Positions 38,343 to 54,368 of a DNA stretch of 64,000 bases are shown here, piece after piece. Within the stretch, counting starts at the first letter, position 1; every line of letters starts with the position of its first letter. The position numbers were made by a program, and so were the translations under genes. The stretch is from IMG/VR virus record IMGVR_UViG_3300046517_002304, positions 372,001 to 436,000 of that record; one strand, given 5' to 3'. The notes beneath the pieces were generated by a model. The model worked only from the letters and a program-made list of their open reading frames with translations, made no database searches and was not told the DNA's origin.

Positions 38343-39326
38343 TTATTTCTTGACTTGCATTAATACATAGCCAACTAATAATAAACAAGAAGCACCATAA
38401 AACCAATGATCTAATGATACCACTTCATTGTAAGGCTTCGTTAGATCTAATTCTAAAAATTGATTTGCTATGTTAGTTATCTGACGAGACATGTCCCCCG
38501 ACGATGAATATCGCACATAAGATCCATTTCCTATTGCGGCGATAAATTTGAGTACGCTCTCATCTAGGCTAGAGCGAAGCATGTTTCCTTTGCCATCAAC
38601 GTAGTAGCCCTCAAAAACATTATCTATACGCTTTGTAAGCTTGCAATTATCTGACCCTAGTCCGATGCTGCTGAACACAAAACCAAACTTCTTCAATTCA
38701 CTAATATGTCTTTTAATTTCATCTCGGTCAATAGTCAATCCTTCCTCAAGGCCACCATCAGACAATACAACAACAATGTTCTTACCGCTAGTGATTTTAC
38801 GATTATTAGCAATTTGATGTAATGCAGAGAACGCACTCTCAACCGAAGTTCCTGGGATATCTACTACCTTATAATCCACTTCACGAAGAAGAGTTAAAAA
38901 AGTACTTTTTTTAGTTGTTAAAGGGCAGTATCCAATGTTTGCCGCGCCCGAGAATGGAATCAAACTTGTGGCAGCAACACCGGGTAATTCGATATAAGAT
39001 TTTTCTATTTCCTGCTTTGCGGCAACCAATCGGTTAGGCCGAATATCCTCACACATCTGCATACTTTTGCTAACGTCCAAGAGGAAGAAAAATCGGATAT
39101 CCTTATAGGCATACTTGACGACTTCCCTATAAGGCCCAGCTAGGCCAATGATAGCGCTGCCGATTGCAGCTACCAAAAGTATAACGGCAGTCATTCTGTT
39201 TTTAAAACTAGGCGTATTGCCCAGCAGACTAATCTCGCCGAATCTACGGATTCGCTTTGCGGCGATGAAGATTACTGGGATTAGCACGAAGAGGAAGTAC
39301 AGGTAATTAGGTGATAGAAGGTGCAT
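38343..39326 (-). CDS. membrane vWA-domain protein (BatB-like)
   Basis: Two N-terminal TMs; MIDAS LDVSKSM, D.RPNRL..AK, CPLT, GT, LSDG; C-terminal TM. Confidence 0.85.
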   Translation of the reverse strand: MHLLSPNYLYFLFVLIPVIFIAAKRIRRFGEISLLGNTPSFKNRMTAVILLVAAIGSAIIGLAGPYREVVKYAYKDIRFFFLLDVSKSMQMCEDIRPNRLVAAKQEIEKSYIELPGVAATSLIPFSGAANIGYCPLTTKKSTFLTLLREVDYKVVDIPGTSVESAFSALHQIANNRKITSGKNIVVVLSDGGLEEGLTIDRDEIKRHISELKKFGFVFSSIGLGSDNCKLTKRIDNVFEGYYVDGKGNMLRSSLDESVLKFIAAIGNGSYVRYSSSGDMSRQITNIANQFLELDLTKPYNEVVSLDHWFYGASCLLLVGYVLMQVKK

Positions 39327-39832: not shown

Positions 39833-40294
39833 TTACCCATTTATCTCATCCACCTTCATTTCAACTAAGTCCACAATTTCTTTGTTAGCCGCATCCGTCA
39901 TCTTCTGCACTTCTTTGTCGTCCAACTCTTTGCGGGCCTTATGCCTAATATTTCTAATTGATATTTTCGCTTGCTCTCCTAATGCCCTCACGAATTTAAT
40001 AATCTTTTCTTTCTCCTCTCCACACCTTTTTGGCACGCTTACAACCACACTGTTCTTTGAAAAGACATAAGAACTAAATCCAGATTTCTGAAGTGCCGTA
40101 TTTATAGTTCCTAGTAAAGCAGGGTCATAAGGCGTGATTTGTATTCTTTTCCCGTCACTGTACACCATCGCAATGTGCTTCAATTCGGAAGTGCTTCCGT
40201 AACACTCTATCTTGACCGAATCCAGCATACCCGGAGAAACAGAGTCTCTAACCCCCTGTAGTTGCTCTACCAAATGATCTACCGCTTTGCTCAT
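39833..40294 (-). CDS. frr: ribosome recycling factor (shortened)
   Basis: LDSVKIECYG, I.PYD, EQAKISIRNIR, EVQKMTD. Confidence 0.85.
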   Translation of the reverse strand: MSKAVDHLVEQLQGVRDSVSPGMLDSVKIECYGSTSELKHIAMVYSDGKRIQITPYDPALLGTINTALQKSGFSSYVFSKNSVVVSVPKRCGEEKEKIIKFVRALGEQAKISIRNIRHKARKELDDKEVQKMTDAANKEIVDLVEMKVDEING

Positions 40295-40307: not shown

Positions 40308-40472
40308 TCAGCACAAGCGATTTTTGTTTTTCTTCATGATTATTTCCTTTGCTTTTTCTGGGTCCATCTTAAAAATCTCAACATAGATATCGTAATCACT
40401 CATAAGTTGCATGCTCTTAAAAACAGGCGTTTTATTAGACCCTATGACATCTACTTTTACTTCTGCTTTCAT
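40308..40472 (-). CDS. MKAEV-start small protein (54 aa)
   Basis: Read by hand: MKAEVKVDVIGSNKTPVFKSMQLMSDYDIYVEIFKMDPEKAKEIIMKKNKNRLC*. Confidence 0.6.
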   Translation of the reverse strand: MKAEVKVDVIGSNKTPVFKSMQLMSDYDIYVEIFKMDPEKAKEIIMKKNKNRLC

Positions 40473-40475
40473 GAT

Positions 40476-41465
40476 TTACTTCTTTTCGCTAACAGTCATA
40501 GCCAGATATTTTTTACCACCAAGTATCTTTGTAGAGAATCCTTGGAAAACAACATTTTTACTAAAATCAATCCTTGTTCCACGCGACGACCGCCAGGTCG
40601 GATATTTAATTACGCTAGCGTTAATATACTCAACCGCCTTCTTAGAAATATCTTCTAACCAGATCAATTCCTTGTCTAAACTATATTCACTATCATTAGC
40701 GCTAAACGGCTTCGGACTTACATATGGAATCAACAATACAGAAGTCATGCCATCAAAATTAGATAACGAATTTGGATTTCTGTTATCAAACTTATGCTCA
40801 ACATATGGAATAATTCTTCTTACTAATGAAATAGATACTCTATAAAAGTCAGTCTCTTGATGAGAGTCAAATACACGAAAAGCAGAACTAAATGTTTCTT
40901 GTGCTTCTAGACAATTAGCGATACGATAAGCCGTTTCGCCTTCTAGACCTTTAAGCATTCCTCTATCATTCCACTTTTTGTAAATATTAGCAGACGCTCC
41001 GGCCTTCTCCCAGATATCCCTATTGTCGGTCGCCACATCTTCCAATTCTAGTCCGGCACCTACGCGATGCGCATGTATAGCGTCCAATATACTATTAATA
41101 GTCTGATGTTTTTTATACGATAAAACCAACTGATCGCCTGGATCGCCGTTGATGAATAACTGAACAAAGTGTCCTTGGCGACAATACTCGTCAAATACAT
41201 CATTATCAAACATTTTAATAGATGCAATGTATTCATCTTTAAAGAAAACGGCAAAGCTGTCCGCTTCAGGAAGAGCCTTCATCTTATACCCATACTTGCA
41301 ACATCTCAAATCGCTGTCGGATAATTCCCAACGATCACCGTATCCGGTCTTAAATTCAACTTTACTCAAATCAACCGCTTCTTGCTTCTGCACACTGGCG
41401 CTTAAATTCTGGATACCAACTAATGGTAGTAACGCACCCGCACTCAAAAATTCTCTTCTTAACAT
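40476..41465 (-). CDS. Tat-signal chimeric protein with gp23 major-capsid N-terminal-like segment
   Basis: MLRREFL leader; domain paralogous to 41530..41802; KKWNDRGMLKGL...IANCLEAQ...SISLVRRI. Confidence 0.55.
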   Translation of the reverse strand: MLRREFLSAGALLPLVGIQNLSASVQKQEAVDLSKVEFKTGYGDRWELSDSDLRCCKYGYKMKALPEADSFAVFFKDEYIASIKMFDNDVFDEYCRQGHFVQLFINGDPGDQLVLSYKKHQTINSILDAIHAHRVGAGLELEDVATDNRDIWEKAGASANIYKKWNDRGMLKGLEGETAYRIANCLEAQETFSSAFRVFDSHQETDFYRVSISLVRRIIPYVEHKFDNRNPNSLSNFDGMTSVLLIPYVSPKPFSANDSEYSLDKELIWLEDISKKAVEYINASVIKYPTWRSSRGTRIDFSKNVVFQGFSTKILGGKKYLAMTVSEKK

Positions 41466-41495
41466 GATCTTGTCCTTTTTGAAAATTATTACTCT

Positions 41496-41523
41496 ATTTT
41501 ATCATTAAAAATTACTTTGTCAA
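41496..41523 (-). promoter_or_regulatory. sigma70-type promoter
   Basis: TTGACA-16 bp-TAAAAT with TGn. Confidence 0.7.
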
Positions 41524-41529
41524 CGTCAA

Positions 41530-41802
41530 TTATTCTAGCCCCAAATTCACACGAGAATCATGGATAAATTTTAGTGTACTCTGGACTGACGGATACTCAT
41601 CTGCCTTAAGATTAACATATGCAAAAGTATCAGAGTCTTTAAAAATAACAGAATGAGCATCAGGCTCCTCGTACATCTTAACTTCTGCTATCTGTTGGTC
41701 TTGCAAGTATATCGGAAAAACCTTGCGTTCTTCCGACCACATAATATCGTAACCATAATCAGAGCTAGTAAGCTTACATAATTCATCTTTCATATCTTTC
41801 AT
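41530..41802 (-). CDS. hypothetical protein, paralog of the N-domain of 40476..41465
   Basis: YGY...IAEVKM...IHDSRVNLGLE vs YGY...IASIKM...IHAHRVGAGLE. Confidence 0.65.
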   Translation of the reverse strand: MKDMKDELCKLTSSDYGYDIMWSEERKVFPIYLQDQQIAEVKMYEEPDAHSVIFKDSDTFAYVNLKADEYPSVQSTLKFIHDSRVNLGLE

Positions 41803-41821
41803 AATTCTTCCTTTTTAAAAA

Positions 41822-42076
41822 TTAATTTTCTTCGTAATTTAAATTCCATAAATTCGCATCACACCCATTTTGGGTAGTTATAAACCAATAGCCAACATAA
41901 TATGAACTTTCCCCAAAAGATAAAAATTTAATCCCATGATGTTTAGCATATGATTTAAACTTCATCACCAAATGCTTCGGCACAGCCCATCCCAGGCTAT
42001 GTGAATTACCAGAATAAACACTGAATATTGTAGATGTACTTTCATACGCAGTAGTTATCTTAACTTCAGCTTTCAT
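41822..42076 (-). CDS. MKAEV family protein
   Basis: MKAEVKI start. Confidence 0.75.
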   Translation of the reverse strand: MKAEVKITTAYESTSTIFSVYSGNSHSLGWAVPKHLVMKFKSYAKHHGIKFLSFGESSYYVGYWFITTQNGCDANLWNLNYEEN

Positions 42077-42294
42077 GTTTTAAACTCCTCGTAAAACCGG
42101 TACAGATAACTTCGATTAACTTCAAATCCACTATACTTGGCGACACAAGGTATTTTATACTTTTTAATAAACTGCGCAAGATGTACGCGATCAGCAAAAC
42201 TTGCGCCTTTAATAAACCTAATAGCATTATTAATATAGGTAATTGTTATTACCGGCTTTTTATGGTCAACTACTATCTTTACTTCTGCTTTCAT
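42073..42294 (-). CDS. MKAEV family protein
   Basis: MKAEVKI start. Confidence 0.75.
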   Translation of the reverse strand: MKAEVKIVVDHKKPVITITYINNAIRFIKGASFADRVHLAQFIKKYKIPCVAKYSGFEVNRSYLYRFYEEFKT

Positions 42295-42295
42295 A

Positions 42296-42532
42296 TTAAA
42301 CTGCCCAATTCTCTACATCATACATCTTATTCATTCTGAAAACATAATTGACGCCATCAGATGCACAGGCTAAATAATAAATTTTTGATCCCATTAATCT
42401 TTTCGTAAAAACGTCAACAACATCTGGTGGAACATATACCATTTGAGCACCGGAAATCTCAGAAGGACCAGATTTTACCCCTCTATGACCAAAAGTGGTT
42501 TTTAGCAATTCTATCTTTACTTCTGCTTTCAT
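42296..42532 (-). CDS. MKAEV family protein
   Basis: MKAEVKI start at 42532 (ATGA overlap); VYVPPDVVDVF. Confidence 0.75.
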   Translation of the reverse strand: MKAEVKIELLKTTFGHRGVKSGPSEISGAQMVYVPPDVVDVFTKRLMGSKIYYLACASDGVNYVFRMNKMYDVENWAV

Positions 42533-42744
42533 TCTTGAATATTCCACTTAGTAGGATCTACAGAGCCTGGCACCTTATAGCTATAATAACTGTACATGTG
42601 ACCAGTTTGATTTTTAAAACACGGCACACCTTTACTTTCCGCTATTTCCAGGAACTTATCAAGAACAGTCTTCTTAACCAAAATATCTTTCCATAGAGAT
42701 AATTGATTGAAATTAAAAATACTTACACTAACTTCTGCTTTCAT
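42529..42744 (-). CDS. MKAEV family protein
   Basis: MKAEVSV start at 42744; ends WNIQE. Confidence 0.75.
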   Translation of the reverse strand: MKAEVSVSIFNFNQLSLWKDILVKKTVLDKFLEIAESKGVPCFKNQTGHMYSYYSYKVPGSVDPTKWNIQE

Positions 42745-42916
42745 CCTGAACCGCCCAATTCTCTCCATCGCTCAAATAATTTATGCCTAGTTTCCTTACT
42801 GATAGCAATCATAAATGCCGGACTTAGCAATTTCCGTCGCAACTCTTCTTTTTCATTCTTAATTCTTGCAATTCTCTTGCGCTGAAGTCTCAGTGATTCA
42901 GATATAATGTGATAAA

Positions 42917-43159
42917 TCATTCTCGCACATTCCATAATCTAACATTATGAAAAGCGGGGATGCGAAATACAGTACAGGACATTAATGGCGTTCCTTTCTG
43001 TATGAAGTATTTTACTCCACGATCTTTAGCACATGATGTAAAAAGATCAACTAAATCTGGCGGAACATAAACATACTGTATTGTATCCCACTTACCGACA
43101 TCAATATTTTTAAACGGTTGCCTGAAATCTAACAAACTTATCCTTACTTCAGCTTTCAT
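42917..43159 (-). CDS. MKAEV family protein
   Basis: MKAEVRI start; VYVPPDLVDLF; ends WNVRE. Confidence 0.75.
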   Translation of the reverse strand: MKAEVRISLLDFRQPFKNIDVGKWDTIQYVYVPPDLVDLFTSCAKDRGVKYFIQKGTPLMSCTVFRIPAFHNVRLWNVRE

Positions 43160-43283
43160 TTTTTATTCTTATAAGTTTTTAAATTCTGCCGAACACGTTC
43201 CGCTTTTTCACGATTACCATTACGATCTAAAACCTTCTTCAGTTGTTTCCTAACTGCATCCGATGCAATGTGGGGGCCAGTCA

Positions 43284-44039
43284 TTAAAACTGTCCTTTAT
43301 TCGGACTGGCTCCTACTAGCGGGCTAGTAAGCTGTTGGACTCTTTCTTCACGAGGCTTCTTTGCCTGCGCCATCATTTTTTCTTTTTGCTGAAGAAGAAG
43401 TTCAATATTAATCTGACTGTTCAAATCCTTATCCTTATACTTCAAAGAATTCTTAAATGCGTTCAGTGAATTAAGAAAAGTTTCTTCCGCATTATCGGGA
43501 GTAGACAATAGCTGCAAATGACGGAAGTAAATGCATCCTTTTGTGTACCACAACATATAGTTGTATTCACTAGAGCCATTATAAGAAATAGTTTCAACGT
43601 AAACCTTTGCCTCATTATAATCCGATATAATACTACGGGAAAGAGTTGATATGAGCGAATGCTGCTCAGGAGTCAAATAAAAATTAGCTTCTGGTTTAGA
43701 CGTATCTCTGTTATCATAAAAAACCTTATGCAGGTTTTTAGCCTTAACGAAATCTCGCTCTGCTCTACGAAGCAATGACAGCGCCATCTTAAGCTTCAGA
43801 ACAGACTCAATTTCGTTTTTGTTATCAACTTCTAGTAAGGATATTTTATACTCAATATTTTTAATGTCATCTGGCTGCGCGGGAGCTGAATTAGCATCAT
43901 CCATCGCTCGCTGTACAGAAGATATGTTATTGTGCTCTGTATCAGAGCGATTCTTATATGCAGAATATACCACATATATTACCACAATAATAAACGCATT
44001 AATACTAAGCCAAACCAACCCATTCCACAACTTACTCAT
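43284..44039 (-). CDS. membrane-anchored TPR-like protein (BatC/MxaK-like)
   Basis: N-terminal TM; WYTKGCIYF...FKNSLKY...SQINIELL; located in the vWA cluster. Confidence 0.55.
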   Translation of the reverse strand: MSKLWNGLVWLSINAFIIVVIYVVYSAYKNRSDTEHNNISSVQRAMDDANSAPAQPDDIKNIEYKISLLEVDNKNEIESVLKLKMALSLLRRAERDFVKAKNLHKVFYDNRDTSKPEANFYLTPEQHSLISTLSRSIISDYNEAKVYVETISYNGSSEYNYMLWYTKGCIYFRHLQLLSTPDNAEETFLNSLNAFKNSLKYKDKDLNSQINIELLLQQKEKMMAQAKKPREERVQQLTSPLVGASPNKGQF

Positions 44040-44048
44040 AAGATACTC

Positions 44049-45080
44049 CTAAACAGATGTTATGTTTTTATTAACTAAAAAAGCGGCGCAAATCATTACT
44101 AAGGCCAGCAATGCAAAATGCTGAGAAAACGACTTCTTATGCCAGACCTTAGTGTTTTTATAAGCGGACTCAATCTCAAAAATCTTCTTGTATGCCTCTG
44201 CTAAATTTTTAGGCTTAACAACTAGAAAATCTCCCCCAGTGTCCTTAACCGCTTTTAAGAAACCAGAAGAACCCATTATACCACTAATCGGCATTAAGTC
44301 AATGATATAAACAGTAATTCCGAAATTTTTACATAAATCAACGACCTTAACAGCAGAAAGATCAGACCTATTCATTGCCGTTGGATTGAAATAACCATCG
44401 GTAAAAAGAACCAGACAATTTCCCCGAGCCATTTCAGATATAGAAGATACTTTGTTTTTAAGTTTACTTATATCAGCCGTAACACCGGCTCCCAAACATC
44501 CTTTATGCATGATTTCTAAATCTGCATCAAGTAGTCCAGTATTCTTAAAGGCAACCTTAACGCCGGTCCATAAAGCCTTTTCTACTTGAGTTCCGCCAGC
44601 AAGCGGAGGCTTTTCCCAATTAATGTCGTTCATTTTTTCTACAATGAAATCAGTATCATCAATTAAATAAGATACAACAAAAGCATTATCTGAAAAAACA
44701 ACAAAGCCCACCAAGTCCTCTCGCTTCTTTTCTTTCAGTAAATCTAGAAACTTTTCATTTGCATCCATCAATGGCTCAACTAAACTCCCGAAAACCATTG
44801 ACATTGATCCGTCATTTATAAGAGTATAGCTTCTTTTTGGTGATGCATATTCAGTATAATAACCAGAAAAGCATATTCCTACCGCTGCACAGAAAAGTGA
44901 TGCACAAGCAATATAATTGAAGGCTTTTCCATAGTTAAACTTTGACTTAACGCCAGAATAAACTATAGATGAAATCTTTACATAGTATTTTGGCTTCCTT
45001 AGAATAAAAAACAAAGGAACCAATACAACTAAAAACAACCAATAAGAATGCTCTAACGTCAAGATTAGGCTCCTGAGCAA
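44049..45080 (-). CDS. membrane vWA-domain protein (BatA-like)
   Basis: N-terminal TMs; NDGSMSM, DLVGFVVFSDNA, GGT, LFTDG; C-terminal TM. Confidence 0.85.
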   Translation of the reverse strand: MLRSLILTLEHSYWLFLVVLVPLFFILRKPKYYVKISSIVYSGVKSKFNYGKAFNYIACASLFCAAVGICFSGYYTEYASPKRSYTLINDGSMSMVFGSLVEPLMDANEKFLDLLKEKKREDLVGFVVFSDNAFVVSYLIDDTDFIVEKMNDINWEKPPLAGGTQVEKALWTGVKVAFKNTGLLDADLEIMHKGCLGAGVTADISKLKNKVSSISEMARGNCLVLFTDGYFNPTAMNRSDLSAVKVVDLCKNFGITVYIIDLMPISGIMGSSGFLKAVKDTGGDFLVVKPKNLAEAYKKIFEIESAYKNTKVWHKKSFSQHFALLALVMICAAFLVNKNITSV

Positions 45081-48717: not shown

Positions 48718-49005
48718 TCATTTCAACTCAGCCAGTCTGCCTAAAATAATATCTTCTTTCTGAAGTCCTTCTAGCCTTGATTCTTCCTTACCATCTTTAA
48801 AAAAGATGATCGTTGGTACAGCACGAATTTTATAATGGTTCGCGGTATCAGCAGAATGCTCCGCATCAACCTTAATAATCTTGACCACCTCTTTTAATTT
48901 GTCAAGAACTGGCTCCATCATTTTGCACGGACGGCACCAACTAGTATGAAAATCTACTAAGACAATTCCGCTCTTAATTTCATCATTAAATTCTTTTAAA
49001 TGCAT
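48718..49005 (-). CDS. trxA: thioredoxin
   Basis: VDFHTSWCRPCK, IRAVPT. Confidence 0.9.
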   Translation of the reverse strand: MHLKEFNDEIKSGIVLVDFHTSWCRPCKMMEPVLDKLKEVVKIIKVDAEHSADTANHYKIRAVPTIIFFKDGKEESRLEGLQKEDIILGRLAELK

Positions 49006-51431: not shown

Positions 51432-52917
51432 CCCTCCTGGTATTCCAACTTTCATTGTAATTGTAGCCCTTCCGCTACCTTCAAAGTTTTAACTTCACTC
51501 CCTACGACCAGTTCTTGTAGGAAGATTTCACCCGAGAGTTTCGCGCTCTTATTTCGGATACTGCCAACAAATTCTTTTAGATCTGCCAGACTAACCCGTA
51601 GTCCTGTAAGGACGGCTTCCTCAACGTTGTCATTCAATTTCCGCCATAAAACCCATGAATGAATTCGTTTATCTTGGTACTTTCCTGCAAGGGTTCCCAA
51701 AACAAAATCCTTCACTCGTTTTTTAGCTTGTTTATAGAATGACAATTTTTCATTAAATCCAAGTCCTCTACGTCCTATCACGTAGGCCGCAGATTCATGG
51801 ATAGTAACCTTGTGCATCCAGCGATACTTGTACTTTCCGATAATACTAGTAAACGCCGGATTAACTTTTATATACTCAACTCCATGCTCAATACATTTTC
51901 GTTCTAATAATTCTATGAATTTACGCCATACAAATGGTGCTCTTCCGCGATTTATTTTTCTTCCGCTAAGACAAATCTCTTTTTTAAAGAACAAGTTCTC
52001 AAACACGATACCCTTATTCTTTTCTTTGGCATAATTAATTACTTGTTTTACTAAACATCCGATATCGTAATCTCTTTTATGGGTAGAACCATATAATAAA
52101 CGATTATTAATTAATGACTTGGATTCTACGAGGTTTCCATCTTTGCTTACTTCAGCCAAGGCGATTCTGTCAGGGTTTGTGTCTACCCCTATACAGCCGT
52201 TGCCTAATTTAGTTGTTGGTTCTGGAGCAGTAATTTGATAATCAATCTTAACATAAAAATGAGTGGCATCTTTTCTAATTAACCGAACATTATATGCTCT
52301 ACCGCTTTGAAGTAATTCTTGCAATCTTTCCTGAAACTTTTGTGGTATGAAAAGATGGTAATAAACCCATTTTTTAAAACCTATCGTAATTCTGAGCCTA
52401 TCGCCGACAATTCTGGCATTAAGATTTCCCTGCCGAGAAGCCCTTCCGCGGCAATAAATTTGCTTATTTCTATTATCTGTCCACTCCGCTTTTGTGATTT
52501 TGCCTAACTTGTAATCTTTCCATGCCTTTCTACCACCAAAGACAAGCTTATAATTACTAATTAATTTATCAATTCGCCCAAGTCTTTTTTTTAATTTGTT
52601 TTTTTGTTTTAAAGAAATCTTCGTTTTTATTTTTTGCTCTATAATTTGTCTTTTTTCGCAAAATCCTTCTATTTCTGATAAAACTTTCAAATAATAAGTT
52701 TGCCCTTCATTTACGGCGTCTGCCAATTGTCTAGAATTTAAATTATTATAAATACCCTTGGCCAATTTCTGAACCGAATAGGGCATCATCTTAGTTTTTA
52801 AAAACTTACAATATGAAAAACGAACACATGATTGAAAATCTATAATCAAACCATCTAGTTCATCAAAATTTATAGCCCATAATTCTCCATGTATAATTTT
52901 AAACATTAGACGATAAC
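51432..52917 (-). mobile_element. minimal non-autonomous TnpB element inserted in the ALDH 3' end
   Basis: Removing 51432..52917 restores ...TGG GCG CAA GGT CTT AAA TGA (WAQGLK*), whose TGA overlaps the next ATG; GG at both junctions; no transposase. Boundaries uncertain by a few nt. Confidence 0.6.
51452..52906 (-). CDS. tnpB: TnpB-related RNA-guided nuclease (IS200/IS605/IS607 accessory protein)
   Basis: RuvC-I GVDTN, RuvC-II VFENL, VNPAFTSIIG, IHESAAYVIGRRGLG; start at MFKIIHGEL (484 aa). Confidence 0.88.
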   Translation of the reverse strand: MFKIIHGELWAINFDELDGLIIDFQSCVRFSYCKFLKTKMMPYSVQKLAKGIYNNLNSRQLADAVNEGQTYYLKVLSEIEGFCEKRQIIEQKIKTKISLKQKNKLKKRLGRIDKLISNYKLVFGGRKAWKDYKLGKITKAEWTDNRNKQIYCRGRASRQGNLNARIVGDRLRITIGFKKWVYYHLFIPQKFQERLQELLQSGRAYNVRLIRKDATHFYVKIDYQITAPEPTTKLGNGCIGVDTNPDRIALAEVSKDGNLVESKSLINNRLLYGSTHKRDYDIGCLVKQVINYAKEKNKGIVFENLFFKKEICLSGRKINRGRAPFVWRKFIELLERKCIEHGVEYIKVNPAFTSIIGKYKYRWMHKVTIHESAAYVIGRRGLGFNEKLSFYKQAKKRVKDFVLGTLAGKYQDKRIHSWVLWRKLNDNVEEAVLTGLRVSLADLKEFVGSIRNKSAKLSGEIFLQELVVGSEVKTLKVAEGLQLQ

Positions 52918-54368
52918 CCTTGCGCCCATGTAATCTTATCGTCATAATTCGTAGTGACAGCAATTTTATGGCAGGTAGCATCAAAATTTCCTGATGCTGA
53001 AGGATGCCCAATTCCACTTTTCTTAATACCGCCGAACGGCACAGAACTTTCTGCACCAATACTTCCTGCATTAAAATAAATCATTCCAGAATCAATCTCA
53101 TCCTGGAACTTTTTCATCGTCCTAAAATTATCGGTTATAACGGCACAGCTTAACCCAAAATCTGTATCATTATAAATTCTAATCGCATCATCCGCATCAT
53201 CAAAAGGAATAATCGCTACGTGAGGGCCAAATACTTCCTCTTTAAGAAATCGCTTGTTTGCCCATTCGCAAAGATAAACAAATGGGGATAAGAAATAACC
53301 ATTACCCACCAATTTGTCGCCTTGTATCAAAACTCTACAAGAACGATCTTTTAGAACCATTTCATTATAAGAAACAACTCTTTCCAATGATTCTTTACTA
53401 ATTACAGGTCCGAAAAAACTTTTTTCATTACTTGGTGCGCCAATAACCAATTCCTTCACTCTGGCAATAAAATGAAGAACAAAACTATTCAATAGTTGCC
53501 TATGTACCAAAATTCGGCCAGCAGAAACACATCGCTGGCCAGCCAATTTAAATGATGAATTAACACAAGCATCAAGAGCAAGGTCTAGGTTTCCATCATC
53601 CATTACAATAACGGCTGACTTACTTCCCATCTCACAAGAACAATCTTTATTCCATTGGGTTGCACAATGCTGTTTAATTTTCATTCCAACTTCGGCGCTT
53701 CCAGTAAATAAAACATAATTTACATCACTATTCTCAACCAATAGTTTTCCGGCTTCATCTTGTCCTTGTATCATGTTGTAAACGCCCGCCGGGAAACCAG
53801 CTTCATGATACAGTTCTGCTGTTAAATTAGCTGACAAAGGCGATAGCTGACTTGGCTTATGAACTACGCAATTTCCTTCTAATATCGCTGGAGCAGAGGT
53901 CCAATGTGTGATGGCATACGGAAAATTCCATGGTGTAACACAAGCTACAACCCCACGAGGCTTGCGAATTATAGAAATTGATTTTTCAGCAACTTCTGAA
54001 GGAATCAATTCGCCTGCCGGCAGTCTTCCTCTACCGGCAGTAATCTCGCACATGTGCTTGGCTTCATTTACTTCAGCCAATGCTTCATTCTTATTCTTGC
54101 CTGTCTCCGCACATATCACTTTTATGATATCATCTTTTCTTCGCTCAATTCGGGCAGCAAGTTTAAGAAAATACTCGCCTCTGGCTGGACGACTAATTTT
54201 ACTCCATTTATGGAATGCATTTCTAGCGGCGGCTACCGATAAATCAACTCCATCTATTACTGTATTATTGACAACTTCAAGGACTTCTTCGGTAGATGGA
54301 TCTATCTTATGAAAATAACCACTTGTACCCGATGAAGTAAATTCGCCATTAATGTAATTTTTATACAT
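52899..54368 (-). CDS. aldehyde dehydrogenase family protein
   Basis: PWNFP, KPS, FTGSAEVG, EMGSK, AGQRC (catalytic Cys), EEVFGP, PFGGIKKSG. Confidence 0.95.
   Translation of the reverse strand: MYKNYINGEFTSSGTSGYFHKIDPSTEEVLEVVNNTVIDGVDLSVAAARNAFHKWSKISRPARGEYFLKLAARIERRKDDIIKVICAETGKNKNEALAEVNEAKHMCEITAGRGRLPAGELIPSEVAEKSISIIRKPRGVVACVTPWNFPYAITHWTSAPAILEGNCVVHKPSQLSPLSANLTAELYHEAGFPAGVYNMIQGQDEAGKLLVENSDVNYVLFTGSAEVGMKIKQHCATQWNKDCSCEMGSKSAVIVMDDGNLDLALDACVNSSFKLAGQRCVSAGRILVHRQLLNSFVLHFIARVKELVIGAPSNEKSFFGPVISKESLERVVSYNEMVLKDRSCRVLIQGDKLVGNGYFLSPFVYLCEWANKRFLKEEVFGPHVAIIPFDDADDAIRIYNDTDFGLSCAVITDNFRTMKKFQDEIDSGMIYFNAGSIGAESSVPFGGIKKSGIGHPSASGNFDATCHKIAVTTNYDDKITWAQGLSSNV

What the first reader, a model, noticed from the sequence alone, without database searches (positions are those of the whole stretch)
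40308..43159. Six small ORFs sharing an invariant MKAEV N-terminus with highly diverged bodies
Seen: starts at 43159, 42744, 42532, 42294, 42076 and 40472 all read ATGAAAGCWGAAGTW (MKAEV[K/R/S][I/V]). Four bodies are only loosely alignable (V-P-x-x-V...F, C-terminal W), and the 40472 body looks unrelated. Inference: the N-terminal strand is a portable functional tag (partner binding, export or packaging signal) or a recombination hotspot generating a diversifying array, for example of defence inhibitors. The array interrupts the Bat-like operon.
Basis: partly seen in the sequence, partly recalled or inferred. Interest (0 to 1): 0.62.

Follow-up and report, generated by a model that had tools for sequence, protein, structure and literature searches.

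The report
Shared N-terminal tag on phage mini-proteins
A 511-kb T4-like soil phage carries about 28 small genes in two tandem arrays that all begin with the same nine-residue peptide (MKAEVKI-S/T-V) but continue into at least two unrelated protein bodies; the peptide looks like a portable docking tag of unknown destination and is seen in no other genome searched.

Summary
All six starts match exactly (0.05 expected by chance). The window lies in a complete 511,233-bp T4-type phage. Genome-wide, 28 ORFs start M-K-A-[ESTN]-[VI]-x-[IVL]: six here, 21 in a second array at genome 251-259 kb, and one singleton.

Between the two arrays only residues 1-9 align. The bodies show no profile similarity and have different predicted folds: five strands plus a helix, versus an ACT-like alpha/beta sandwich. 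In both AlphaFold models the tag is not packed against the body.

Synonymous sites in the tag vary, and two members start with GTG, so selection acts on the peptide rather than the DNA.

No relatives appeared in 15 billion proteins, in IMG/VR, in a metagenome scan, or in the nearest phage (capsid protein 61% identical). The array is identical in all other samples found, so there is no sign of ongoing diversification.

The phage also carries a separate set of canonical T4-like capsid-targeting N-termini (for example MKTFQEWLKE). The MKAEV tag is therefore probably not the capsid-targeting sequence.

Best reading: a modular amphipathic N-terminal beta-strand that docks many small domains to one common partner, which is unidentified. 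The function is inferred, not shown.

The parts
42917..43159 (-). Tagged ORF 1 (80 aa, MKAEVRISL...). Class-B body. Its start overlaps the upstream stop as ATGA.
   Evidence: AF2 model pLDDT 70, residues 1-17 below 50, body strand-strand-helix-strand-strand. Body recovered by the leave-one-out HMM at E 4e-5.
42741..42935 (-). Untagged 59-64 aa helical ORF inside the array. Its 3' end carries, in another frame, a relic of a class-B gene end (ENWAV) joined to the next tag start.
   Evidence: 54-nt repeat D3, 42281-42334 versus 42731-42784, 78% identity. Frame translation. Called as a 59-aa gene on other contigs.
42529..42744 (-). Tagged ORF 2 (71 aa, MKAEVSVSI...). Class-B body. ATGA stop-start overlap.
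   Evidence: BLASTP of the body to ORF 1, E 7e-5.
42296..42532 (-). Tagged ORF 3 (78 aa, MKAEVKIEL...). Class-B body. ATGA overlap.
   Evidence: Body BLASTP to ORF 1, E 4e-7. Leave-one-out HMM E 2e-4.
42073..42294 (-). Tagged ORF 4 (73 aa, MKAEVKIVV...). Body not detectably related to the others. Starts 1 nt after the upstream stop.
41822..42076 (-). Tagged ORF 5 (84 aa, MKAEVKITT...). Body alignable to class B only by eye. ATGA overlap.
41530..41802 (-). Untagged 90-aa ORF ending ...IHDSRVNLGLE. It resembles the C-terminal helix of the class-A bodies in the other array.
   Evidence: Cluster-A HMM E 0.017 over the body. hhalign E 3e-4, probability 40%. The link is weak.
40476..41465 (-). 329-aa ORF with a twin-arginine-like signal (MLRREFLSAG...). 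Residues about 58-140 form a domain homologous to the 90-aa ORF.
   Evidence: BLASTP E 1e-8. A sigma-70-like site lies just upstream at 41523-41496.
40308..40472 (-). Tagged ORF 6 (54 aa, MKAEVKVDV...). Body unrelated. Starts 3 nt after the upstream stop and lies directly upstream of the RRF gene.
43156..43284 (-). 42-aa untagged ORF whose TGA stop is supplied by the first tag's ATGA.
44049..45080 (-). Upstream flank: membrane-anchored vWA (BatA/B-like) gene of the MoxR/DUF58/vWA cluster.
   Evidence: Pfam VWA_2.
38343..39326 (-). Downstream flank: second vWA gene. RRF at 39833-40294 lies between it and the array.
   Evidence: Pfam VWA_2 E 5e-11, RRF E 2e-26.

Best explanation
The nonapeptide M-K-A-(E/S/T)-V-K-I-(S/T)-(V/L/I) is a modular N-terminal amphipathic beta-strand. 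Hydrophobic residues sit at positions 3, 5, 7 and 9 and polar residues at 2, 4, 6 and 8. It is kept by protein-level purifying selection on a phage-specific family of about 28 small proteins. The family grew by tandem duplication into two translationally coupled arrays.

The tag is joined to at least two unrelated globular bodies. One is a five-strand-plus-helix body at 251-259 kb. The other is an ACT-like alpha/beta body in the window. There are also two or three orphan bodies.

It most likely works as an address or docking strand. Free at the N-terminus and not packed on its own body, it would add as an edge strand to one common partner, so that many different small domains are brought to the same place. 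The partner is unknown. Candidates are a virion or prohead component, or the MoxR/vWA (Bat-like) membrane complex around the window array.

Shown: the family, its extent, the tag-body modularity, peptide-level selection, translational coupling, and absence elsewhere. Predicted: the tag lies outside the fold. Inferred: docking to a common partner.
For: - Six exact starts in the window against 0.05 expected. Genome-wide, 28 tagged starts against 0.24 for permuted motifs, all on the minus strand and 27 of them in two arrays.
- Information content is high for positions 1-9 and then collapses.
- Profile-profile alignment of the two arrays covers residues 1-9 only (probability 92%). With the tag removed the probability is 0.07%.
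- AF2 class A: pLDDT 86, strands from residue 15, first ten residues at mean 52. AF2 class B: pLDDT 70, residues 1-17 below 50, and a different topology.
- A linker of 2-8 residues rich in G/N/K/S/E separates the tag from the HPY motif of class A.
- Bodies occur without the tag (window 41530-41802 and 40476-41465; genome 253516), and the tag occurs on orphan bodies.
- Wobble positions vary inside the tag (GCT 13, GCA 9, GCC 2, GCG 1; GTT 14, GTA 9, GTC 1). Two members use GTG starts and still keep KA[ET]VK.
- The motif never occurs internally in any ORF.
- Capsid, scaffold and protease genes, taken here to be highly expressed, do not start this way.
- This lineage demonstrably uses N-terminal address peptides. 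A T4-CTS-like set is enriched 16-fold here and 37-fold in the nearest relative. The T4 CTS concept is described in PMC9026906 and PMC8442874.
Against: - No partner is identified and there is no experimental or expression data; no RNA run holds the locus.
- The AF2 alignments are shallow (6 and 18 rows), so the finding that the tag is not packed may be a modelling limit.
- The homodimer prediction gave no verdict.
- Codon choice in the tag is biased to A/T (AAA 21 of 25; GAA 17 of 17), so some mRNA-level selection is also present.
- MKA persists in members whose EVKI has decayed. This fits partly translational selection.
- Three window bodies could be extremely diverged paralogs rather than shuffled modules.
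Confidence: 0.45

Rival explanations
1. Ordinary divergent paralog family. The N-terminal strand is simply the most conserved structural element of each protein's own fold or homo-oligomer. All members descend from one ancestor by tandem duplication, and the window bodies have diverged beyond recognition. There is no shared partner and no portability.
For: - Tandem arrays, and a junction relic showing duplication units that span a gene end plus the next start.
- Graded decay of the tag within cluster A, for example MKAIL.., MKALS.., MKAKV...
- Three window bodies are demonstrably paralogous.
- ACT-like folds often pair through edge strands.
Against: - The two body classes have different predicted secondary-structure order and no profile similarity.
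- The tag is not placed in the sheet in either model.
- The linker between tag and body varies in length.
- Homodimer prediction gave no support, which is uninformative.
- Residues 1-5 staying invariant while bodies fall below detection needs a constraint that does not depend on the body.
Confidence: 0.25
2. A second, non-canonical capsid-targeting or virion-anchoring peptide. It would act like the T4 internal-protein CTS, binding the scaffold core for packaging and injection. Alternatively it would act like the N-terminal strand of lambda gpD-type decoration proteins. Either way it loads about 28 small proteins into or onto the virion.
For: - The head module is T4-type: Gp23 capsid protein E 5e-87, S77 gp21-like protease E 1e-25, a coiled-coil scaffold between them, and a T4 portal E 6e-63.
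- In T4, CTS peptides of 10-19 residues head unrelated small proteins and are portable (PMC9026906, PMC3012670).
- The tagged proteins are 54-106 aa, close in size to T4 IPI (~8 kDa) and IPII (~10 kDa) (PMC9026906).
Against: - The same genome has eight ORFs with a canonical CTS-like start M[KL][TSN][FW]x[EQ][WFY][LI]xE, for example one ending L-K-E like a gp21 site, against 0.5 expected. The relative has 25.
- The MKAEV tag lacks the aromatic residues at positions 4 and 7 that T4 targeting needs (PMC9026906).
- It has no conserved L/I-x-E cleavage site, and E4 is S/T/N in 9 of 27 members.
- The proteins are not more basic than background (median pI 8.8 in both).
- The T4 late-promoter motif is not enriched in this genome and cannot date the genes.
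Confidence: 0.12
3. Selection at the translation level. ATGAAAGCWGAAGTW would be an optimised, unstructured, A-rich initiation region. Its ATGA provides a built-in stop-start junction for termination-reinitiation along the arrays, and the peptide itself would be incidental.
For: - Four of six window starts overlap the upstream stop as ATGA and the other two lie 1 and 3 nt away. Cluster-A junctions are likewise tight and are preceded by G-rich GWE/GLE codons that resemble a Shine-Dalgarno site.
- AAA (21 of 25) and GAA (17 of 17) exceed the genome usage of 58% and 71%.
- MKA is the most persistent part of the tag.
- A phage RRF gene abuts the array.
Against: - Wobble positions at Ala and Val vary freely, and the replacements at position 4 are polar residues encoded by unrelated codons (TCC, ACC, AGT, AAT...).
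- GTG-start members keep the peptide.
- Untagged genes inside the same coupled arrays begin differently.
- Capsid, scaffold and protease genes do not use it.
- Conservation extends to residue 9 with an alternating hydrophobic pattern.
Confidence: 0.12
4. Recombination hotspot. The shared 15-21 nt at each gene start would serve as microhomology for cassette exchange, generating a diversifying array of, for example, anti-defence proteins.
For: - A tag shared by unrelated bodies is what cassette shuffling at a common 5' sequence would produce.
- The junction relic at 42731-42784 shows that a gene was replaced or decayed next to a retained tag start.
Against: - No long identical tracts exist; the repeats are 71-89% identical over 28 nt.
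- Zero differences in contigs from four other runs, and 1 SNP in 12.6 kb, outside the array, in another assembly.
- No variant arrays in 15 billion proteins, IMG/VR or the metagenome scan.
Confidence: 0.06

Closest known systems
Capsid targeting sequence (CTS) of phage T4 internal proteins IPI/IPII/IPIII (MKTYQEFIAE; PMC8442874, PMC9026906, PMC3012670)
   Same: A short peptide of about 10 residues at the extreme N-terminus, starting MK, conserved on small proteins whose bodies are otherwise unrelated. The host phage has the T4-type head module (gp23, gp21 and gp20 homologues). The concept of a portable address on polymorphic cargo is the same.
   Different: - The sequence is unrelated, with no aromatic residues at positions 4 and 7.
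- There is no conserved L/I-x-E processing site.
- About 28 genes sit in two tandem arrays, rather than a few loci.
- A separate canonical CTS-like set coexists in the same genome.
- Virion presence is unknown.
N-terminal strand anchoring of capsid decoration proteins (lambda gpD type) and donor-strand extensions of chaperone-usher pilins (from general knowledge, not checked here)
   Same: An N-terminal extension with alternating hydrophobic residues that is unstructured on the free subunit. It would become a beta-strand by adding to a sheet of a partner.
   Different: There is no sequence or fold similarity. No acceptor groove or partner has been identified. The homodimer prediction gave no verdict.
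Lineage-specific multigene families of small ORFs in giant phages and viruses
   Same: Tandem expansion, no homologues outside the lineage, rapid body divergence, translational coupling.
   Different: Here an invariant N-terminal nonapeptide crosses body classes that have different predicted folds.

Membership tests
T4-type capsid targeting sequence (CTS) | A conserved peptide of about 10 residues at the extreme N-terminus of otherwise unrelated small phage proteins | tested here: met
   Residues 1-9 are conserved across 27 ORFs. Bodies are unrelated between the two arrays.
T4-type capsid targeting sequence (CTS) | Consensus like MKTYQEFIAE, with targeting determinants at residues 4 and 7 (aromatic in T4) | tested here: not met
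   The tag has E/S/T at position 4 and I/V at position 7. A different set of 8 ORFs in the same genome does fit the consensus. The determinants are given in PMC9026906.
T4-type capsid targeting sequence (CTS) | The peptide ends at a gp21 cleavage site (L/I-x-E) | tested here: not met
   There is no conserved Glu after position 4. Only some cluster-A linkers contain x-x-E.
T4-type capsid targeting sequence (CTS) | The phage has a T4-type prohead core with a gp21-family protease and a scaffold | tested here: met
   PF03420 E 1.4e-25, PF07068 E 4.8e-87, PF07230 E 5.7e-63, with a coiled-coil ORF between the protease and the capsid protein.
T4-type capsid targeting sequence (CTS) | The proteins are packaged in the virion and processed | not testable with these tools
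   This needs virion proteomics.
ACT / ferredoxin-like alpha-beta sandwich (window class-B body) | Fold match well above background | tested here: inconclusive
   VIA-align best hit Z 8.0, rmsd 2.1 over 64 residues to the aspartokinase regulatory domain 6mx1_B. This is the typical best score for unmatched models. Foldseek PDB E >= 0.06. Atlas TM about 0.6. The model has pLDDT 70.
Any Pfam / PHROG family (both body classes) | HMM match at or near the curated threshold | tested here: not met
   No Pfam hit. The best PHROG E-values are 0.0018-0.3, on scattered families.
Donor-strand-exchange polymers (pilin-like) | An incomplete fold that accepts a neighbour's N-terminal strand, or self-association through the tag | tested here: inconclusive
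   The monomer models are complete folds. The two-copy complex scored 0.01 against a mark of 0.42, which is no verdict.
Bat-like MoxR/DUF58/vWA operon (context only) | MoxR AAA_3 ATPase, DUF58 and two vWA proteins encoded on the same strand | tested here: met
   AAA_3 E 8e-36, DUF58 E 9e-11, VWA_2 E 5e-11 and 7e-6. The tagged ORFs themselves match none of these families.

The most novel reading that the evidence does not exclude
The phage runs two separate N-terminal address codes. The canonical T4-like CTS (MKTF.EWL.E) would send cargo into the prohead. The MKAEVKI-S/T-V strand would send about 28 interchangeable mini-domains to a different common receptor. That receptor could be the MIDAS face of the flanking MoxR/vWA (Bat-like) membrane complex, because Glu4 is invariant in all six window copies. 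It could also be a virion surface site. This would be a previously undescribed cargo-addressing system in giant phages, and any protein could in principle be redirected by adding nine residues.
Probability: 0.2. Interest if true: 0.8.

Novelty: new variant of a known kind. Interest (0 to 1): 0.55.

Why it matters
Short portable address peptides are how T4 loads polymorphic cargo into its head, and the T4 CTS is used as an engineering handle. This study finds a second, sequence-unrelated nonapeptide that heads about 28 genes with unrelated bodies in one T4-like megaphage, alongside the canonical CTS. That suggests giant phages may use more than one addressing code. It also gives a very direct experiment: tag versus no tag on a reporter. 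In addition, the family is a clean case of extreme within-gene rate contrast, with nine invariant residues next to bodies that have diverged past detection. Finally, it is a warning that conserved gene-start sequences in coupled arrays combine peptide-level and mRNA-level constraints.

Tried and rejected
- Pfam and PHROGs on all window ORFs and 18 cluster-A members: nothing usable.
- Word-index protein search with one ORF and with both family profiles: only this phage's own proteins.
- Exhaustive HMMER profile search of 1.84 billion representatives with the cluster-A profile: 16 of the 18 hits are full-length proteins of this phage and one is a 58-aa fragment of another. The remaining hit is a weak, unrelated repeat protein, P0026 (E 3.5e-4).
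- IMG/VR scans by a flanking vWA protein and by the tag DNA pattern: none, and two single chance-like hits.
- Metagenome scan for the tag pattern: 43 loci, each with a single unrelated MKAEVKI start and no arrays.
- tblastn of the 490-aa neighbour against GenBank phages: no match.
- megablast of the region against phages: no match.
- Foldseek PDB and BFVD, VIA-align wide, Atlas by features and by shape: no match above background for class A, and only a generic ACT/ferredoxin-like resemblance for class B.
- Complex prediction with two copies of a cluster-A member: score 0.01 against a mark of 0.42. This is no verdict and is not evidence either way.
- RNA evidence: no RNA run holds the locus.
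- The T4 late-promoter motif TATAAATA is not enriched genome-wide (28 and 21 hits against 36 expected) and is absent upstream of both arrays and of the capsid gene. Expression timing could not be inferred.
- The sigma-70 and terminator scan was at shuffle level.
- Charge bias as in the basic T4 internal proteins: rejected, median pI 8.8 equals background.
- Internal occurrences of the motif in other proteins: none.
- An analogous large tag family in the nearest relative: none, with at most 4 ORFs sharing the same five N-terminal residues apart from the CTS-like set.
Full report
**What the window is.** The window is bases 372,001-436,000 of a 511,233-bp virus record with direct terminal repeats, rated complete. 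It has 39% G+C, and in the window nearly all genes lie on the minus strand. The phage is T4-type:
- a Gp23 major capsid protein (E 4.8e-87);
- an S77 gp21-family prohead protease (E 1.4e-25);
- an acidic coiled-coil scaffold ORF between the two;
- a T4-type portal (E 5.7e-63).

Runs that hold the DNA are soil and rhizosphere metagenomes, and none is RNA.

**Observation.** ATGAAAGCWGAAGTW occurs six times in the window, all on the minus strand and exactly at the reported starts. Shuffles expect 0.05. The ORFs are 80, 71, 78, 73, 84 and 54 aa, and gene callers on other assemblies chose the same starts. Four starts overlap the upstream stop as ATGA. The other two follow it by 1 and 3 nt.

**Extent of the family.** The whole genome has 28 ORFs starting M-K-A-[ESTN]-[VI]-x-[IVL], against 0.24 expected for permuted motifs.
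- Six lie in the window and one is a singleton at 146,897.
- Twenty-one lie in a second tandem array at 250,995-259,074. Two of these use GTG starts.
- A frameshifted copy and a few members with a decayed tag bring that array to about 30 genes.

Information content is maximal at residues 1-3 and 5. It stays high through residue 9 and then collapses. Hydrophobic residues at 3, 5, 7 and 9 alternate with polar residues at 2, 4, 6 and 8, which is the pattern of an amphipathic beta-strand. The motif never occurs internally in any ORF.

**Bodies.** The 251-259 kb array (class A) is a coherent family of about 85-100 aa: tag, linker of 2-8 residues, HPY, then Y-x-x-R-x-x-G-W/L-E.
- Its AF2 model has pLDDT 86, with five strands from residue 15 plus a C-terminal helix. 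The first ten residues average pLDDT 52 and have no assigned secondary structure.
- In the window, the bodies of 43159, 42532 and 42744 are demonstrably paralogous. Those of 42076 and 42294 align only by eye. The 40472 body looks unrelated.
- The AF2 model of 43159 has pLDDT 70 and a strand-strand-helix-strand-strand layout, with residues 1-17 below 50.
- Profile-profile comparison of the two arrays aligns residues 1-9 only (probability 92%). With the tag removed it gives 0.07%.

Class A has no structural neighbour above background. Class B resembles ACT/ferredoxin-like sandwiches only at the level typical of unmatched models.

Two untagged window ORFs, 41530-41802 and the N-terminal domain of 40476-41465, are homologous to each other (E 1e-8). 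They weakly share the class-A C-terminal helix motif. So tag and body occur apart as well as together.

**Level of selection.** Inside the tag the wobble positions vary: Ala uses GCT, GCA, GCC and GCG, and Val uses GTT, GTA and GTC. Position 4 changes to Ser, Thr or Asn through unrelated codons. GTG-start members keep the peptide. The constraint is therefore on the peptide.

There is also an A/T bias. AAA is used in 21 of 25 cases and GAA in 17 of 17, against 58% and 71% genome-wide. MKA outlasts the rest of the tag in decayed members. Ordinary selection on the initiation region therefore contributes.

Untagged genes in the same coupled arrays, and the capsid, scaffold and protease genes, start differently. 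Translation alone does not explain the tag. The conserved C-terminal GWE/GLE codons of class A lie just upstream of the next start and are G-rich, so they may double as ribosome-binding sequence. This last point is inference.

**Origin and dynamics.** Repeats between the genes are confined to the tag (28 nt, 71-89% identity). The exception is one 54-nt junction repeat. It shows a relic of a class-B gene end plus the next tag start inside the 3' end of the untagged 59-aa ORF. That fits old tandem duplication with later gene replacement, not recent conversion.

Contigs from four other runs are identical over the array. Five other assembled contigs are exact substrings of the genome. A sixth, of 12.6 kb, differs by one SNP outside the array. 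These strains are near-clonal and say little about long-term change.

No homologue of either body class and no other array of the tag was found in:
- the word-index search;
- an exhaustive profile search of 1.84 billion representatives;
- IMG/VR;
- the metagenome contigs.

The nearest phage on hand is LR756511.1 (595 kb, capsid protein 60.7% identical). It has no MKAEV start and no match to either profile.

**A control that changes the interpretation.** I scanned N-termini in the relative and then in this genome. Both carry dispersed ORFs starting M-[KLR]-[TNS]-[FWY]-x-[EQD]-[WFY]-..., for example MKTFQEWLKE. This closely resembles the T4 internal-protein capsid targeting sequence MKTYQEFIAE (PMC8442874), including aromatic residues at positions 4 and 7, which T4 targeting requires (PMC9026906).
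- This genome has 8 such ORFs against 0.5 expected.
- The relative has 25 against 0.68 expected.

The lineage therefore has a recognisable CTS, and the MKAEV tag is not it.

**Mechanism.** The best-supported reading is a modular N-terminal docking strand that brings many small domains to one common partner. Modularity and peptide-level selection are shown. The unpacked state of the tag is predicted from shallow alignments. The docking itself is inferred. Candidate destinations are:
- a virion component reached by a second, non-canonical route;
- the MoxR/DUF58/vWA cluster that surrounds the window array. Glu4 is invariant in all six window copies, and vWA MIDAS sites bind acidic ligands (general knowledge).

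Rivals are listed with their tests: a purely structural first strand in a fast-diverging paralog family, a second CTS, translation-level selection, and a recombination hotspot. The single complex job, a class-A homodimer, gave no verdict.

**Verdict.** The diversifying-hotspot idea is not supported. The family is new at the sequence level and confined to one phage. The principle of an N-terminal address on polymorphic small phage proteins is known from T4, so this is a new variant of a known kind with an unidentified destination.

Noticed in passing
Genome starts (strand) 28131 (+), 41500 (-), 44901 (-), 63682 (+), 157167 (+), 157396 (+), 232017 (-), 490997 (-), all outside the window; relative LR756511.1 (loci L025-L054): Dispersed ORFs with unrelated bodies start with a T4-CTS-like peptide M[KLR][TNS][FWY]x[EQD][WFY].., for example MKTFQEWLKE. 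There are 8 here against 0.5 expected and 25 in the relative against 0.68. They are probably the real capsid-targeted cargo set of this megaphage clade.
   Followed up: partly
window 40476-41465 (-); genome 325124, 361519, 341719 (-): Twin-arginine-like signal peptides on phage proteins: MLRREFLSAG... on the 329-aa window ORF, and MKRRNF[FL]... on three other ORFs. This suggests the phage exports proteins through the host Tat pathway.
   Followed up: no
window 39833-40294 (-): A phage-encoded ribosome recycling factor (Pfam RRF, E 2e-26) lies directly downstream of the last tagged ORF, next to arrays that rely on stop-start overlaps.
   Followed up: no
genome 259,100-305,000 (L019 covers 258,500-272,000): G+C jumps from about 38% to 52-59% immediately upstream of the first gene of the 251-259 kb array, then decays to 44% over about 45 kb. 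The ORFs there are short and messy. This may be an acquired island or an unusual region.
   Followed up: partly
genome 257843-257594 (-): A frameshifted class-A member. A 21-aa tagged ORF is followed in another frame by a 74-aa ORF that matches HMM positions 27-88.
   Followed up: partly
window 42731-42784 versus 42281-42334: A 54-nt junction repeat at 78% identity. The 3' end of the untagged 59-aa ORF holds an out-of-frame relic, ENWAV, of a class-B gene end joined to the next tag start.
   Followed up: yes
window 51452-53071 (-) and 52899-54368 (-): A protein with precomputed hits to SSO2105_N and, weakly, to the Cas12f1-like TNB domain, which suggests it is TnpB/Cas12f-like. It lies next to an aldehyde dehydrogenase gene. 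A thioredoxin lies at 48718-49005.
   Followed up: no
window 41496-41523 (-): The best sigma-70-like site of the region (TTGACA, 16-nt spacer, TAAAAT, with TG) sits in the 64-nt gap upstream of the 329-aa Tat-signal ORF. It possibly splits the array into two transcription units. The scan overall was at shuffle level.
   Followed up: no
genome 146897 (-): A lone tagged ORF (57 aa, MKAEISVKE...) lies far from both arrays.
   Followed up: no
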